Assembly (NCBI RefSeq): GCF_902713615.1
Contig: NC_052171.1
Location: forward strand, 1,860,001 to 1,924,000
Reading direction: 5' to 3'
Source of the DNA: Scyliorhinus canicula
Taxonomy: Eukaryota
Length of the DNA stretch: 64,000 bases
Each line of letters starts with the position of its first letter. The stretch's first letter is position 1. This document shows, in pieces, positions 34,221-59,073 of this stretch. Below the pieces are notes generated by a model. The model did no database searches, was not told where the DNA came from, and worked only from the letters and a program-made list of their open reading frames with translations. The position numbers were made by a program, and so were the translations under genes.

Positions 34221-34354
34221 CATTTTCTCTTCTTTGGCAGGAGGATTTTTTAGGAAGATACAGAGTGGAGCATAGGCAATATTCATGACTCCAATGATGA
34301 ACATTAGCCATGGGAATCCAATTGCTTTGACAATGATTCCTCCCATTGAGGGCC
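34221..34354 (-). CDS. SLC18A1: SLC18A1-like coding exon 14 ([22 protein letters not shown]...NPPAKEEKM)
   Basis: 134 nt, TM12 plus PPAKEEK motif, donor gtaaga. The 14 exons total 1452 nt = 484 codons with no stops. Confidence 0.94.
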
Positions 34355-35588
34355 CTGGATGGTAAGAATAAAATGTTTTATCTTCTATGTGAGACATCCA
34401 CTTGTTCAGCTTTAGTTAGCTAATAATACTTGACACATTAATGTGGGGTGGCAGGGTACCACACTGCTGCCTTGCTCTATATGGAGTTTTCACTTTCTCC
34501 TCATGTCTGTGTGGGTTTTATCCTGGTTCTCCTGTTTCCTTCCTACAGGGCAGAAGGAGGCCATTCGGCCCATTAGGTCTACTCTGAAGGAGCATCCCAT
34601 CCAGCCCCACCCCCGACCTATTCCCACAATCCCACCCAAACTTTTGAACACTAAGGGGCAATTTATCATGGCCAATCCACCTAACCCGCACATCTTTGGA
34701 CTGTGGGAGGAAACTGGACCACCCAGAGGAAACCCACGCACACACGGGGAGAACATGCAGACTCCGCACAGACAGTGACCCAAGGCTGAAATTTAACCTG
34801 TTTCCCTGGTGCTGTGAGGCAGCAGTGCTAACCACTGTGCCACCGTGCTGCCCAGTTAAGGGGGATAGGGTGGTGGAGAAGGGTGCTCTTTTGGAGGGTT
34901 GGTGCAGACTCGATGGGCTGAATGGCCTCCTTCTGCATTGTAGGGATTCAATGGATTCTGGGTCTACCAAGGGCGAGCACTCTTGGATTTTGTTCCAAAA
35001 GATTGAAATTATACAGTCAAAGTCCCCACAATATTTGATTTTCAGAAAGCCTTATGACAAGACCTGATGTGGAAGACTGTCGTTTAAACTAAAATCAGTT
35101 GGAATCTTAGAAAAAAAATTACCCAATTCTTTGTTTTCCAATTAAGGGACAATATAGCGTGGCCAATCCACCCACCCTGCACATATTTTTTTGGGTTGTG
35201 GGGGGTGAGACCCATGCAGACACGGGGGGAATGTGAAAACTCCACAATCCTACTTTTGTAGTCCTGGAATCCACGTGATAGGGCGGATGTGATAGCACTG
35301 GAAAGGGTACAGTGACACGGGGCTGGGATCAATCCTGGATCCTCAGCACTGTGAGGCAGCAGTGCTAACCACTGCACCACCGTGCTGCCCCTAAATCTAT
35401 TGGAAACGAAGGTAGAATATGGTTCTGGATAGAAATGATGGATAAAACAGAAAATGAAGAACACTGAGCAGTTGTAGATTGAGAGAGTTTGCAGCCCACC
35501 CCACATTTCTCATTCGACACTTTGAGAGAGAGAGAGGGGCTTCTATTTAAATAGAAGTGTATGCAAGAAAACATTGGTATTGACTCAC

Positions 35589-35708
35589 CAATTGCAAATC
35601 CCAAACACAGTGCCACATCACTGATCGCGAAAACACTTCCATACACAGACACATGACGAATGTCCACCAGGTAACCCATTATGGGAAACAGCGAGGAATC
35701 AATCATCC
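35589..35708 (-). CDS. SLC18A1: SLC18A1-like coding exon 13 ([40 protein letters not shown])
   Basis: 120 nt, SLC18 signature LVD.RH.SVYGSV.AI.DVA. Confidence 0.94.
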
Positions 35709-36489
35709 CTGGTCATTTCAAAGAACACACTCAGAATTAAGGCGGAAAAGTGCAGCAACATTTTCCCAGTACAGGATTAGGTTGGAAGCAGCAATCTATT
35801 CAGCTTGATGACAATGGGGGAACCCTTCACTGATAGGAAACGCAAAGTCAACGGCTGCGTGGTTGCTGGGCCGCAGTTGGGCCTGGAAGCCTCTCAACCC
35901 TGAACTGAAAAGCTTTGAGGGGTTGGTCTTTTTTCCAGGACGCTCATGATGGAGAGATCTGGGCCCAGATCAACTCTGTGCCTCTCACCCATTTCATACT
36001 AACATCTTGAAACAGGCTGTGCTAAAATTCATCTTGTATCAATTTGTTCAACATCCAACATCAAAATAGGAGGCTTATTTTGGTGATTAAACTTCTGGAC
36101 ACTGCTCACATTTCAAAAATAAATCCTTCCCCTCATTGTAAACCCCAGCTTAAACCGGAGCAAGCAGCTTTATGACAGGTCTCAGTAACAGGACCATTTT
36201 AAACCAGGACCAGTGTTGAATCCCTTACGACCAAGCAGCTCAGTGTCGCCAACGTGAGCAAACAGTTTAAATTTCACCCTCAGACTTTAGCTCAAGTCTT
36301 AACCCATTATTATTATATTGACACATGCCCTCCCCAAATATGAGATGCCAAATCTCATGTCCCTCACAGAGGGGAATGAGAAATGTGGTTGGTACCTTTG
36401 TTCTGGCTGCACTTCCATCATTAGGTCCAGCCATTAGTGTGAAAGTGTGATGGTCAGGTATGATCATAATGAATGGCTGATCATCCAAC

Positions 36490-36990
36490 TCAATAGCCTA
36501 ATCCCCCATATCCTTTGATCCCCTTCGCCCTAAGTGTGATATCGAACTGCTTCTTGAAACCATACAATGTTTTGGAATCAACTACTTCCTGTGGTAATGA
36601 ATTCCACAGGCTCACCACTCTCTGAATGAAAAATTTCTCCTCATTTTCCATCGGGAATATCCTTCCTGCATCTACCCTTACCAGACGGTTTCTAAGAGAT
36701 CCCCATCATTCTTCTGAACTCCAACGCATGCAATCCCAACCGGTTCAATTTCTCCTGGTATGTCAGTCCCGCCATCCCTGGAATCAGCCTGGTAAACATT
36801 CGCTGCCCTCCCTCCATAGCTAGAACATCCTTCCTCAGATAAGGAGACCAAAACTGCACACAATAGTCCAGATGTGGCCTCACCAACACCCTGTATAATA
36901 GTAGCAAGACAACCCTGCTCCTGTACTTGAATTCTCTCGTTATGAAAGCCGACACACTATTAGCCTTCATTACCGCCTGCTGTACCTAGC
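36490..36990 (-). mobile_element. CR1-like LINE ORF2 fragment
   Basis: LYRVLVRPHLDYCVQFWSPYLRKD...QR.FTRLIPG motif. Confidence 0.85.
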
Positions 36991-56606: not shown

Positions 56607-56665
56607 TTATTGTTGACGTAAACAGTATCACAAAACCAGTGAACATAGGAATGTCATATCCAATC
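56607..56665 (-). CDS. SLC18A1: SLC18A1-like coding exon 3 (IGYDIPMFTGFVILFTSTI)
   Basis: 59 nt, AG/GT, in phase, VMAT TM3 motif. Confidence 0.92.
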
Positions 56666-57540
56666 CTGAAAGGAAGAAAATACAGTTTATATGAAGAGTG
56701 ATGAGAGCCCTTATATCCAGGAGTATCCACATGGCTGAAATAAAAACAGAAAAGGCTGGATAAACTCAGCAGATCTGGCAGCATCAGCGGAGAGAGAAAC
56801 AGAGTTAACATTCCAAGTCAGTGTGACTCTTCTTCATAGCCTTGGCTGAATGTTCTCATTGCATCTTTTAACATGAAGACAAAGAATTTCCTGTGACTGT
56901 CATGTTTCAATTGTAGACCCTCCAAAGAAGATCGATTCACATGATAAAAATTCTGGAGATGAACTAGTATGGGGGATTTAAGCTGGTAAAAGAGAATGAA
57001 GTGATTTCAATCCTGGCTTTTTGTTTTCCAGTTCATTTATTCCTCTGGTTTTCAGCTGCCTTTGCAGCTTGAGGAGAAGCTAAAACACTTTGATTTTCAT
57101 TCCTCCTCCAGCCTGGAATTAGTCAACAAAAAGGTGACACAAACTGAAATCTTAGACAACTTAACTGGATGGGAAATTCTCGGTGAGACAATGTGTTGCA
57201 TACCAGAGTTATTCAGAAAGAGAATTCTTGTGATCCTGCTGGGCCTCGCTACGACATGCACCATTCTCCCAGCCAAGTAGGAGGCACATTCCAACATTGG
57301 GCACTGCCCTTTTAGTTGTGGCTGCCTGGAGACAGGATTCAGCCACAGGTTCTGTGCCGCTTTAGGCCGTGACTGGTGATCTGTTGTGTCGGAAACTGAG
57401 AGCTCAACCGAATTTGAGATCCTTGGCACAACATATTCAAGCACAACAGCACGCAAGGTACTCTGGTGATCTGTGTAGCTTAGTGCGCAATCTAAATAAA
57501 TATACCCAGTTACGACTGGTGCAAAGACTTTCTCACTTAC

Positions 57541-57883
57541 CTGCTGGTCAATGGCCCAACCAATGGATTCACTAAGAGCTGCACAATTGCTTTTGAAGCA
57601 AATAACAAGCCGACACGAATGTTTTCATCTGATAAAAATGTATCATTTTTGCTGCAATTGACGCTTGCAGCGGTTGTCTTCAAACCTACAATGGGAGCTT
57701 CTGTTGTATTTCTCCATTCAAACCCTTCAGTTCTTGTAGTGTTCTGAGTCATAAATTGGCCATCAGTAGAATATGCACTGTCAGGGAAGGCAGTGGAGGG
57801 CAATGCTTGAGGGTGTTTCAGTGCTGCTGAGTTATTCATTTCCGCCATATGTTGATTGTATAAGAAACTGGGGATGATTGGTA
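57541..57883 (-). CDS. SLC18A1: SLC18A1-like coding exon 2 (VPIIPSFLY...luminal loop...ENIRVGLLFASKAIVQLLVNPLVGPLTSR)
   Basis: Diagnostic VMAT motifs; loop with several N-x-S/T sequons and the loop Cys; 343 nt, AG/GT. Confidence 0.92.
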
Positions 57884-58940
57884 CTGAAACAGAAAAAAAA
57901 GGAACATTATTGTTGACCGGTTATTAAATTCCCCTTATGTGAAGAGTGAAAAGATGTGGGCCATTTTAGACTTGGGTGATGGTCTGTGGGATTATAGTTG
58001 AGCTCTCTGAAGTTACCGAACATCCCAAAGGCAATGGCTCTTTGTAATAACTGAGAGTTATAATTTGGAGACACTTACCACTGGACATAATGAAAGGTAC
58101 CATCTCTCCACATAACCACATAACTTTAGACACAAGACAAGGGTGGGGGGATGCTGAATAATTTCTTTGGCATCCATACAGTTCAGAAAGAGGTCATTTA
58201 GTCCATCAAGTATGCACCAACCCGCCGAAAGAGCAATCTACCTCGGTCCATAACCCCCCCCATAACCCTGCATATTGATCATGGCCAATACACCTAAGCT
58301 GCACATCTTTGGACTGTGGGAGGAAACCGGAGCACCCGGAGGAAACTCACGCAGATACGAGGATAACGTGTAAACTCTACACAGTCACCAAAGGCCGGAA
58401 TTGAACCCGAGTCGCTGGCGCTGTGAGGCAGCGGTGGTAACCACTGTGTCACCGTACCACCCATGTAAAGCAATGTTTTGTGAACATGCTGTCCCACAGG
58501 CAGGGAAACTGTGGATTTCAAACATATTTTCTTCCCGCGTGCATGTTCGTCAGGTAGATACTGAGCCAATAAAGCAAGAAACATCTTTCAAGAAAAAACA
58601 TAAAACATGTCAAGCTGAACCTCCTTATATGGTTCAGAACAACCACTGTGGGGGGCTGGGGAGCAGATTGCTTAGCTGTCCACCTGATTGGAACTGTGGA
58701 GCAAGAGGCAAGCAGAAATTGAGGGGGAGGAAGCAGAGCTACAGTTTACTGTTCATTGTAGTGTGCGGACCTCAACCCCTCAGTGTGTGAGATACTCAGT
58801 GAGAGATTTGGTCCCTCAGTACATGGAAAGCTTGGGGGTGCCATTCTTCTAAAATCTCTGCCCTTCAGTGTTATTCTCCCTGATGGCCAGAATGTTATTT
58901 GTAAACTGCACACTCCAGATGACACTCAACTTCAACTTAC

Positions 58941-59073
58941 CAACAACAGTTAACAGGGTAAAGTCCAGAAAGAGTGCCAACCAAACAATAACCAACACCA
59001 TTGTCCTGGACTGTCTTGCCTTCTTCAGATATTGCCATGCTCCGCACTCCTTTGCACATGTCAGTATTTTCAT
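58941..59073 (-). CDS. SLC18A1: SLC18A1-like vesicular amine transporter, coding exon 1 (MKILTC...RQSRTMVLVIVWLALFLDFTLLTVV)
   Basis: VMAT N-terminus/TM1 (SR.LVL..V..AL.LD..L.TVV). Acceptor at 59100-59101, donor gtaagt. Confidence 0.85.

What the first reader, a model, noticed from the sequence alone, without database searches (positions are those of the whole stretch)
34221..59073. Intact but divergent VMAT1-like transporter with substitutions in substrate-site and gate residues
Seen: all 14 exons are in frame with canonical splice sites, so the gene looks functional. Relative to the VMAT consensus as I recall it (human VMAT2 numbering), D33, K138, Q142, R189, E312, W318, F334, Y341, D399 and D426 are kept. 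Changed positions are TM1 DNM>DFT (N34F), TM5 GGL>GGV (L228V), TM7 EP>EQ, loop KWQLG>QLYLG, TM10 PN>PM (N388M), DSSMMP>DSSLFP, and TM11 VYAIADVAF>VFAISDVAL (Y422F, F429L). Inference: proton-coupling residues retained around a remodelled pocket suggest a paralog with different substrate or drug specificity, possibly an undescribed SLC18 branch beside canonical SLC18A1.
Basis: partly seen in the sequence, partly recalled or inferred. Interest (0 to 1): 0.7.

Follow-up and report, generated by a model that had tools for sequence, protein, structure and literature searches.

The report
Catshark VMAT1 with remodelled binding pocket
This is the catshark's single, already annotated copy of VMAT1 (the pump that loads adrenaline-type transmitters into secretory granules), not a new gene branch, but in sharks and rays as a group several ligand-contact residues that never change in other animals have been replaced.

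Summary
The gene is real and intact on the minus strand. All introns are GT-AG and the product is 515 aa. It equals residues 1-514 of the RefSeq protein 'chromaffin granule amine transporter [Scyliorhinus canicula]'.

It is not an extra paralog. It falls in the VMAT1 clade (100/98). It has the same exon sizes as bird VMAT1 and the same neighbours: a V-ATPase B gene upstream and TTI2 downstream. It was the only VMAT1-type catshark protein found, beside a canonical VMAT2.

The changes belong to elasmobranchs as a group. In all 15 shark and ray VMAT1s sampled, 16 sites that are near-invariant from molluscs to humans are replaced. They include N34 to Y/F/H, P313Q, W328L, S338 to T/A, N388 to G/M/F/S, M403 to I/V/F/T and Y422F. 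The clade's stem branch is very long (0.56).

dN/dS is about 0.3, so the gene is under constraint. Expression could not be tested, and altered substrate or drug specificity remains an inference. This scan holds no earlier follow-up on this stretch.

The parts
58941..59073 (-). Coding exon 1. ATG at 59073. Encodes TM1 with the LDFT motif (D33 kept, N34F, M35T).
   Evidence: identical to P0288; site table
57541..57883 (-). Coding exon 2. Encodes the large lumenal loop with 5 N-X-S/T sequons and TM2 (F135, K138, Q142 kept).
56607..56665 (-). Coding exon 3 (59 nt, TM3).
   Evidence: same size in four other elasmobranchs and in emu
55602..55685 (-). Coding exon 4 (84 nt, TM3/TM4). R189 kept, F176Y, S200T.
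51031..51123 (-). Coding exon 5 (93 nt, TM5). GGV in place of GGL (L228V).
50370..50459 (-). Coding exon 6 (90 nt, TM5/TM6).
48324..48367 (-). Coding exon 7 (44 nt).
45290..45350 (-). Coding exon 8 (61 nt).
44164..44259 (-). Coding exon 9 (96 nt, TM7). E312 and W318 kept, P313Q, W328L, Q329Y.
43978..44056 (-). Coding exon 10 (79 nt, TM8). F334 and Y341 kept, A337S, S338T, I343L.
38536..38587 (-). Coding exon 11 (52 nt, TM9).
38369..38432 (-). Coding exon 12 (64 nt, TM10 start). K379T, G383Y, A386F, N388M.
35589..35708 (-). Coding exon 13 (120 nt, TM10/TM11). D399 and D426 kept, V398I, M402L, M403F, Y422F, A425S, F429L.
34221..34354 (-). Coding exon 14 (134 nt, TM12).
30410..30505 (-). C-terminal tail ending ...EARNE, stop TAA at 30412-30410.
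   Evidence: the same ending is annotated in S. torazame
30204..30318 (-). Optional 16th coding segment, used only in the RefSeq 552-aa model. It is reached by splicing out 30413-30319 (95 nt, GT..AG), which holds the conserved stop. Not found in the other species examined.
1734..4931 (-). Context: 5' exons of the TTI2 gene, the downstream neighbour. They serve as a synteny marker.
   Evidence: Pfam Tti2; PDB TELO2-interacting protein 2, E=2.6e-8; tblastx to emu TTI2

Best explanation
This is the small-spotted catshark's one-to-one ortholog of SLC18A1 (VMAT1, the chromaffin granule amine transporter). It is an intact 12-helix MFS proton/amine antiporter gene with the standard 15 coding exons.

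On the branch leading to sharks and rays, VMAT1 went through a burst of amino-acid change. The residues needed for proton coupling and amine binding were left in place: D33, K138, R189, E312, Y341, D399, D426.

Sixteen positions that are invariant in every other VMAT sampled were replaced. These include:
- N34 and S338, which contact the hydroxyl groups of the substrate ring.
- N388, the partner of E312.
- P313, next to E312.
- M403 and Y422, in the inner cytosolic gate.
- L228, M403 and F429, which line the pocket for reserpine's trimethoxybenzoyl group (L228 and F429 are clade-wide changes but not among the 16 invariant sites).

Since that burst the new residues have mostly been kept under purifying selection. 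Scyliorhinus added a few further changes (Y34F, G388M, I/V403F, A425S).

Shown: gene structure, orthology, the substitutions, their spread across the clade, and dN/dS below 1.

Inferred: the protein still loads amines into acidic secretory granules, but recognises the ring or hydroxyl end of its substrates, and inhibitors such as reserpine, differently from mammalian VMAT1.
For: Gene model: all GT-AG, 515 aa, identical to RefSeq P0288 over residues 1-514.

Fold: PDB sequence matches to VMAT2 and VMAT1 score 618-637 bits, against 298 bits for VAChT. The AlphaFold model (pTM 0.71) matches VMAT2 and VMAT1 structures at target-normalised TM-score 0.93-0.94.

Phylogeny:
- VMAT1 clade 100/98.
- Elasmobranch VMAT1 clade 100/100, on a 0.56 stem.

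Synteny:
- In Carcharodon a V-ATPase B gene lies head-to-head 8 kb upstream.
- In emu the order is V-ATPase B / VMAT1 / MAK16 / TTI2.
- TTI2 lies 25 kb downstream in the window.

Gene structure: exons 3-14 have identical sizes in catshark, Amblyraja, Stegostoma, Rhinoraja, Pristis and emu.

Copy number: only one S. canicula VMAT1-type protein, plus a canonical VMAT2.

Sites: 16 of 193 near-invariant sites are replaced clade-wide. Examples: P313Q 15/15, W328L 15/15, N34 to Y12/F2/H1, N388 to G11/M2/F1/S1.

Constraint:
- Pairwise dN/dS 0.19-0.34.
- Codon-model omega 0.317.
- Scyliorhinus branch 0.32 (bootstrap 0.21-0.49).

Roles of the residues, from papers:
- N34 hydrogen-bonds the serotonin hydroxyl, and N34A abolishes uptake (PMC12721464).
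- N34 mutants lose dihydrotetrabenazine binding, and N388 pairs with E312 (PMC10959523).
- S338 binds a catechol hydroxyl (PMC11405867, PMC11695631).
- M204/M221/M403/Y422 form the inner cytosolic gate, and L225/L228/M403/A425/F429 hold reserpine's trimethoxybenzoyl group (PMC10770148, PMC11695631).
Against: - No expression evidence was obtained.
- No transport or binding data exist for any elasmobranch VMAT1 in the papers searched.
- An omega near 0.3 is well below 1, and VMAT1 changes 2-5 times faster than VMAT2 in the same species. Part of the change may therefore be relaxed constraint rather than a new specificity.
- The enrichment of clade-wide replacements among literature-defined functional residues is only suggestive: 5/30 against 11/163, one-sided Fisher p=0.08.
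- Tyr at position 34 in most elasmobranchs could still offer a hydroxyl, and several changes are conservative (Y422F, S338T, V398I).
- No holocephalan VMAT1 was recovered, so the timing of the burst is open.
Confidence: 0.75

Rival explanations
1. The same gene and orthology hold, but the substitutions are functionally neutral or mutually compensating. For example, Tyr34 would fill the space opened by Gly388 and supply the lost hydrogen bond. Elasmobranch VMAT1 would then transport the usual monoamines with ordinary pharmacology.
For: - All proton-coupling and amine-binding residues are kept.
- Several changes are conservative.
- N34Q and N34D are tolerated in VMAT2 transport assays (PMC10959523).
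- E312D is tolerated (PMC12721464).
- VMAT1 evolves fast in general.
Against: - N34 and N388 are invariant in every other VMAT sampled, from mollusc to human, in both paralogs.
- N34A and N34T reduce or abolish transport (PMC10959523, PMC12721464).
- Scyliorhinus has Phe34, with no hydroxyl, and Met388.
- Several contact positions changed together on one branch.
Confidence: 0.3
2. The gene is drifting under relaxed constraint because VMAT2 covers monoamine storage in elasmobranchs. It would be a weakened or non-transporting relic on its way to loss.
For: - A long stem branch and terminal rates 2-5 times those of VMAT2.
- Omega about 0.3, and higher on some terminal branches.
- 58 differences between two congeners, some at pocket positions, including E312D in S. 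torazame.
- No expression evidence.
Against: - The reading frame is intact with 15 exons in all 15 elasmobranchs sampled. Four were checked exon by exon on genomic DNA.
- Omega is clearly below 1 on the catshark branch (0.21-0.49).
- The new states are themselves conserved: Q313, L328 and T379 in 15/15, L429 in 14/14.
- The catalytic acidic residues are kept.
Confidence: 0.1
3. One reading: an extra, undescribed SLC18 paralog that sits beside a canonical SLC18A1.
For: Only 58-61% identity to bony VMAT1, barely above its identity to VMAT2. NCBI names several elasmobranch orthologs with the suffix '-like'.
Against: - No second VMAT1-type protein from S. canicula or any other elasmobranch appears among the 120 best hits, a list that reaches down to VMAT2.
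- No other SLC18-like exons are in the window.
- Phylogeny, exon structure and two-sided synteny all fit orthology.
Confidence: 0.04
4. Hidden paralogy. Elasmobranchs and bony vertebrates would each have kept a different copy from the whole-genome duplications, so the shark gene would be a sister paralog of SLC18A1 rather than its ortholog.
For: - The very long stem branch.
- V-ATPase B and SLC20A genes exist as duplicated pairs in vertebrates (my own knowledge).
Against: TTI2, a single gene in human as far as I know, flanks the gene in catshark. TTI2 and MAK16 flank VMAT1 in emu, with V-ATPase B on the other side in emu and in Carcharodon. That pattern is expected for one orthologous block.
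Confidence: 0.04

Closest known systems
Human VMAT1 / SLC18A1 (chromaffin granule amine transporter; PDB 8TGG-8TGN)
   Same: - Same clade.
- Same coding-exon count and sizes as bird VMAT1, and the same neighbours as in bird.
- Same fold (TM-score 0.93).
- Shared residues: D33, K138, Q142, R189, E312, W318, F334, Y341, D399, D426.
- Shared VMAT1-type residues L204 and F433.
   Different: 57-61% identity. In human VMAT1 numbering, N35, M36, L236, P321, W336, Q337, A345, S346, N396, V406, M411, Y430 and F437 are replaced. The lumenal loop cannot be aligned.
Human VMAT2 / SLC18A2 (PDB 8JSW, 8T69, 8THR and others)
   Same: Same fold and same transport residues. It is the reference for the known roles of N34, N388, S338, M403 and Y422.
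   Different: A different paralog. The catshark has its own canonical VMAT2 (P0467), at least 87% identical across elasmobranchs, on a contig of a different length.
RefSeq 'chromaffin granule amine transporter(-like)' models of other sharks and rays (P0392-P0405, P0469)
   Same: Orthologs. They share the clade-wide signature LDY/F-T, LEQ, KLHLG-type loop, PG/PM in TM10 and VFAI.DVAL, and the 15-exon structure.
   Different: Scyliorhinus carries further changes: Y34F, G388M, M402L, I/V403F, A425S, A386F, S200T. It has a stop six codons earlier than most other sharks.

Membership tests
SLC18A1 (VMAT1) ortholog group | Falls inside the VMAT1 clade, apart from VMAT2 | tested here: met
   VMAT1 clade 100/98, with elasmobranch VMAT1 sister to bony VMAT1
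SLC18A1 (VMAT1) ortholog group | Conserved neighbourhood: V-ATPase B subunit head-to-head upstream, and the MAK16/TTI2 block downstream | tested here: met
   V-ATPase B upstream in Carcharodon. Emu order is V-ATPase B / VMAT1 / MAK16 / TTI2. TTI2 lies in the window at 1734-4931. The V-ATPase B gene itself lies beyond the window edge. TTI2 is inverted relative to emu.
SLC18A1 (VMAT1) ortholog group | Gene structure of 15 coding exons with fixed internal sizes | tested here: met
   Exons 3-14 measure 59, 84, 93, 90, 44, 61, 96, 79, 52, 64, 120, 134 nt in catshark, four other elasmobranchs and emu
SLC18A1 (VMAT1) ortholog group | Single copy per genome, beside one VMAT2 | tested here: met
   One S. 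canicula VMAT1-type hit (P0288). VMAT2 is P0467, on a contig of a different length. The test is limited to annotated proteins among the 120 best hits.
Vesicular monoamine transporters (VMAT, SLC18A1/A2) | 12-helix MFS fold with a large glycosylated lumenal loop between TM1 and TM2 | tested here: met
   Pfam MFS_1 (precomputed). AlphaFold model and Foldseek, target-normalised TM-score 0.93-0.94. Five N-X-S/T sequons at residues 61-126.
Vesicular monoamine transporters (VMAT, SLC18A1/A2) | Charged and polar residues for proton coupling and amine binding (D33, K138, R189, E312, N305, Y341, D399, D426) | tested here: met
   All are present in catshark, and in 13-15 of 15 elasmobranch VMAT1s
Vesicular monoamine transporters (VMAT, SLC18A1/A2) | Canonical ligand-contact and gate residues that are invariant in other VMATs (N34, M35, P313, S338, N388, M403, Y422) | tested here: not met
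   The catshark has F, T, Q, T, M, F, F at these positions. They are replaced in nearly all 15 elasmobranch VMAT1s.
Vesicular monoamine transporters (VMAT, SLC18A1/A2) | Proton-driven, reserpine-sensitive monoamine uptake | not testable with these tools
   Needs vesicle uptake and binding assays
Vesicular monoamine transporters (VMAT, SLC18A1/A2) | Expression in chromaffin, enteroendocrine or neuronal cells | not tested
The run searches showed no RNA holder.
SLC18A2 (VMAT2) | Falls inside the VMAT2 clade | tested here: not met
   A separate catshark VMAT2 exists.
SLC18A3 (VAChT) | Closest similarity is to VAChT | tested here: not met
   VAChT chains score 293-298 bits against 618-637 bits for VMATs; 33% against 54-58% identity in Foldseek

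The most novel reading that the evidence does not exclude
Sharks and rays have re-tuned VMAT1 for a different cargo or pharmacology. The lost hydrogen-bond donors N34 and N388 and the altered S338, M403 and Y422 might favour amines without ring hydroxyls, or change gating kinetics and reserpine binding. Their canonical VMAT2 would keep the classical job. If so, this is a 270-million-year-old natural mutagenesis experiment on the VMAT substrate site.
Probability: 0.35. Interest if true: 0.6.

Novelty: new variant of a known kind. Interest (0 to 1): 0.42.

Why it matters
VMATs are drug targets (reserpine, tetrabenazine, amphetamines). Recent cryo-EM work names N34, E312, S338, N388, M403 and Y422 as substrate contacts or gate residues.

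An entire vertebrate clade has kept VMAT1 under selection while replacing exactly such residues. That clade offers ready-made, mutually compatible variant sets for testing how substrate and inhibitor recognition is built.

It also raises the question of what elasmobranch chromaffin and enteroendocrine granules load.

For annotation, it shows that the '-like' names and the 552-aa RefSeq model are quirks of one ordinary ortholog, not signs of a new gene.

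Tried and rejected
- The representative search with the 40-aa exon 13 returned mostly exon-sized fragments, none above 83% identity.
- The first homolog search, with a bird VMAT1, returned only sauropsids.
- An alignment of one amphioxus scaffold plus all exon pieces was misaligned by MAFFT. Four invertebrate scaffolds plus 11 exon pieces aligned correctly after local trials, and that alignment found the RefSeq protein.
No dN/dS between the two Scyliorhinus species was therefore possible.
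- The 'RNA?' runs sharing 6-11% of the words of the 5.6-kb stretch hold none of the last-exon words. Their share probably comes from intronic repeats, not from mRNA.
I used a least-squares split of the pairwise dN and dS values instead.
- Motif scans, with motifs from memory, found no V-ATPase B exons upstream in the window or in locus flanks, and no MAK16 in the window.
- The enrichment of replacements in functional residues did not reach significance (p=0.08).
- Hidden paralogy and an extra paralog were considered and rejected on synteny and copy number.
- No holocephalan VMAT1 was recovered.

Full report
**Observation**

The gene lies on the minus strand. tblastn with VMAT proteins, followed by inspection of every boundary, gave 15 coding exons. 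They run from the ATG at 59073 to a TAA at 30412-30410. All introns are GT-AG, the CDS is 1548 nt and the product is 515 aa.

Position 34221 is the donor of exon 14, not the gene end.

The product is identical over residues 1-514 to the RefSeq protein 'chromaffin granule amine transporter [Scyliorhinus canicula]' (P0288, 552 aa).

RefSeq splices out 95 nt (30413-30319) that contain the stop, and adds 37 residues. Three observations favour the 515-aa product:
- The RefSeq isoform X1 of S. torazame is 515 aa and ends the same way.
- Other elasmobranch proteins end within six residues of this point.
- Four other elasmobranch genes have exactly 15 coding exons.

**Residues**

I aligned 40 VMAT sequences together with a human VMAT2 construct whose numbering I checked at 13 landmark residues.
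- Further changes: M35T, S200T, A337S, S338T, K379T, G383Y, A386F and V398I.

**What it is**

The best solved-structure matches by sequence are VMAT2 and VMAT1 (618-637 bits). VAChT scores 298 bits. An AlphaFold model (mean pLDDT 71.9, pTM 0.71, helices 80-94) superposes on VMAT2 and VMAT1 structures at target-normalised TM-score 0.93-0.94.

In a maximum-likelihood tree of 39 sequences:
- The catshark protein sits in a clade of 15 shark and ray proteins (100/100).
- That clade is sister to bony-vertebrate VMAT1, and the VMAT1 clade has 100/98 support.
- VMAT2 of sharks, rays and chimaera sits with VMAT2 of other vertebrates.

Among the 120 best database hits to P0288, a list that reaches down into VMAT2, each elasmobranch contributes one VMAT1-type protein. 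S. canicula contributes only P0288. Its canonical VMAT2 (P0467) sits on a 145-Mb contig, whereas this gene is on a 24.9-Mb contig.

**Orthology rather than paralogy**

- In Carcharodon a V-ATPase B-subunit gene lies 8 kb upstream on the opposite strand.
- In emu the order is V-ATPase B (-), VMAT1 (+), MAK16 (+), TTI2 (-) within 28 kb.
- In the window, the 5' exons of TTI2 lie 25 kb downstream of the transporter (Pfam Tti2; PDB TELO2-interacting protein 2, E=2.6e-8; 62% identity over 88 residues to the emu gene).
- TTI2 is inverted relative to emu. That fits an inversion of the MAK16/TTI2 pair, with MAK16 then lying beyond the window.
- Exons 3-14 have the same twelve sizes in catshark, Amblyraja, Stegostoma, Rhinoraja, Pristis and emu.

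Together these make a one-to-one SLC18A1 ortholog by far the best reading. They argue against both an extra paralog and reciprocal loss of duplicates.

**The changes are a clade trait**

I looked at sites that are near-invariant (at most one exception) across all other sequences. Those were bony VMAT1, all VMAT2, lamprey, amphioxus, a mollusc and an annelid. Of 193 such sites, 155 are kept in elasmobranch VMAT1. Sixteen are replaced in at least 85% of the 15 elasmobranch proteins:

| Site | Replacement in elasmobranch VMAT1 |
|---|---|
| L21 | M |
| F27 | Y/W |
| N34 | Y (12), F (2), H (1) |
| M35 | T/I/A |
| F176 | Y |
| P313 | Q (15/15) |
| W328 | L (15/15) |
| Q329 | H/Y |
| A337 | S |
| S338 | T/A |
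| I343 | L/M |
| N388 | G (11), M (2), F (1), S (1) |
| V398 | I |
| M403 | I/V/F/T |
| Y422 | F (13/14) |
| C488 | variable |

L228 to V/I, K379T (15/15) and F429L (14/14) are also clade-wide. Bony-vertebrate VMAT1s, including two teleosts, keep the canonical residues.

The stem of the elasmobranch VMAT1 clade is 0.56 substitutions per site. The bony VMAT1 stem is 0.07 and the chondrichthyan VMAT2 stem is 0.10. Scyliorhinus adds a 0.20 stem of its own.

**What the replaced residues do in VMAT2, from papers**

- N34 belongs to the D33-centred polar network. It hydrogen-bonds tetrabenazine, and its mutants lose dihydrotetrabenazine binding. N34A roughly halves serotonin transport and N34T nearly abolishes it. 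N388 points at the carboxylate of E312 (PMC10959523).
- The serotonin hydroxyl bonds N34, E312 and Y433, and N34A abolishes serotonin and dopamine uptake (PMC12721464).
- S338 bonds a catechol hydroxyl of dopamine (PMC11405867, PMC11695631).
- Y422 sits at the centre of the inner cytosolic gate, ringed by M204, M221 and M403. Its hydroxyl bonds G407. Weakening it favoured the cytosol-facing state.
- Reserpine's trimethoxybenzoyl group is held by L225, L228, M403, A425 and F429 (PMC10770148).

In the catshark, four of those five reserpine contacts differ.

Replacements are somewhat more frequent among literature-defined functional residues (5 of 30 against 11 of 163). This is not significant (one-sided p=0.08).

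**Constraint**

I mapped four elasmobranch proteins exactly onto their genomic loci and built a 474-codon alignment with the catshark CDS.
- Pairwise dN/dS (NG86) is 0.19-0.34.
- A codon model gives omega 0.317.
- A least-squares split of the pairwise distances gives 0.32 for the catshark branch (bootstrap 0.21-0.49).

The gene is under purifying selection. In the same species pairs, VMAT1 differs 2-5 times more than VMAT2. For S. canicula against S. torazame the figures are 88.7% against 96.9% identity. The congeners differ at some pocket positions, including E312D in S. torazame.

**Mechanism**

Shown:
- An intact VMAT1 ortholog.
- Retained proton-coupling and amine-binding residues.
- A clade-wide replaced set of ring-contact, E312-partner and gate residues.
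- Selection on the new states.

Inferred:
- The protein is still a proton/amine antiporter of secretory granules.
- The polar cluster around the ligand's hydroxyl end (N34, E312, N388, S338) has been rebuilt. Tyr or Phe from TM1 may fill the space freed by Gly388.
- The inner cytosolic gate has lost the Y422 hydroxyl and M403.

Together this should change substrate preference, gating energetics or reserpine binding.

**Not obtained**

- Expression. The two run searches found no RNA holder of the last exons.
- Literature. Searches found no paper on shark VMAT1.
- A chimaera VMAT1, which was not recovered.

**Verdict**

This is an ordinary, already annotated ortholog, not a new SLC18 branch. As a natural variant of a well-studied drug-target pocket, it is moderately interesting.

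Noticed in passing
window 30319-30413 (-): The RefSeq S. canicula model removes a 95-nt GT..AG mini-intron that contains the conserved stop codon. This lengthens the protein from 515 to 552 aa. Neither the S. torazame RefSeq model nor four other elasmobranch genes do this.
   Followed up: partly
window 9997-11908: A tandem array of a 15-nt unit (consensus GGGCTCCATGGTGTA), 132 copies, 85% matches, G+C-rich. It produces spurious ORFs of more than 500 aa in several frames.
   Followed up: partly
window 1734-4931 (-): 5' exons of TTI2 (TELO2-interacting protein 2), in the same orientation as the transporter. In emu TTI2 is inverted and MAK16 lies between the two genes, which suggests an inversion of the MAK16/TTI2 pair.
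   Followed up: partly
window introns, e.g. 39204-39411, 42791-43172, 46404-46931, 50134-50382, 52491-52890, 56000-56621: Many copies, in both orientations, of one short interspersed repeat. Its translation repeats motifs such as HTDSDP...PGSN..GP.C.EAA.LT. The repeat was not searched further for that reason.
   Followed up: no
P0469 (S. torazame) and P0394 (Chiloscyllium punctatum), alignment: Two elasmobranch VMAT1s have Asp instead of the otherwise invariant E312 (LDQ in place of LEQ). In human VMAT2 the E312D mutant is reported as tolerated (PMC12721464).
   Followed up: no
P0075 (fluke Paragonimus), alignment A2: A trematode VMAT also has Met at the N388 position (LIVPMFG), an independent occurrence of the catshark's PN to PM change.
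   Followed up: no
If that is really SLC20A1 rather than SLC20A2, it sits on the same small chromosome as 8p-type genes (SLC18A1, TTI2). That would be of interest for reconstructing paralogous chromosome regions.
   Followed up: no
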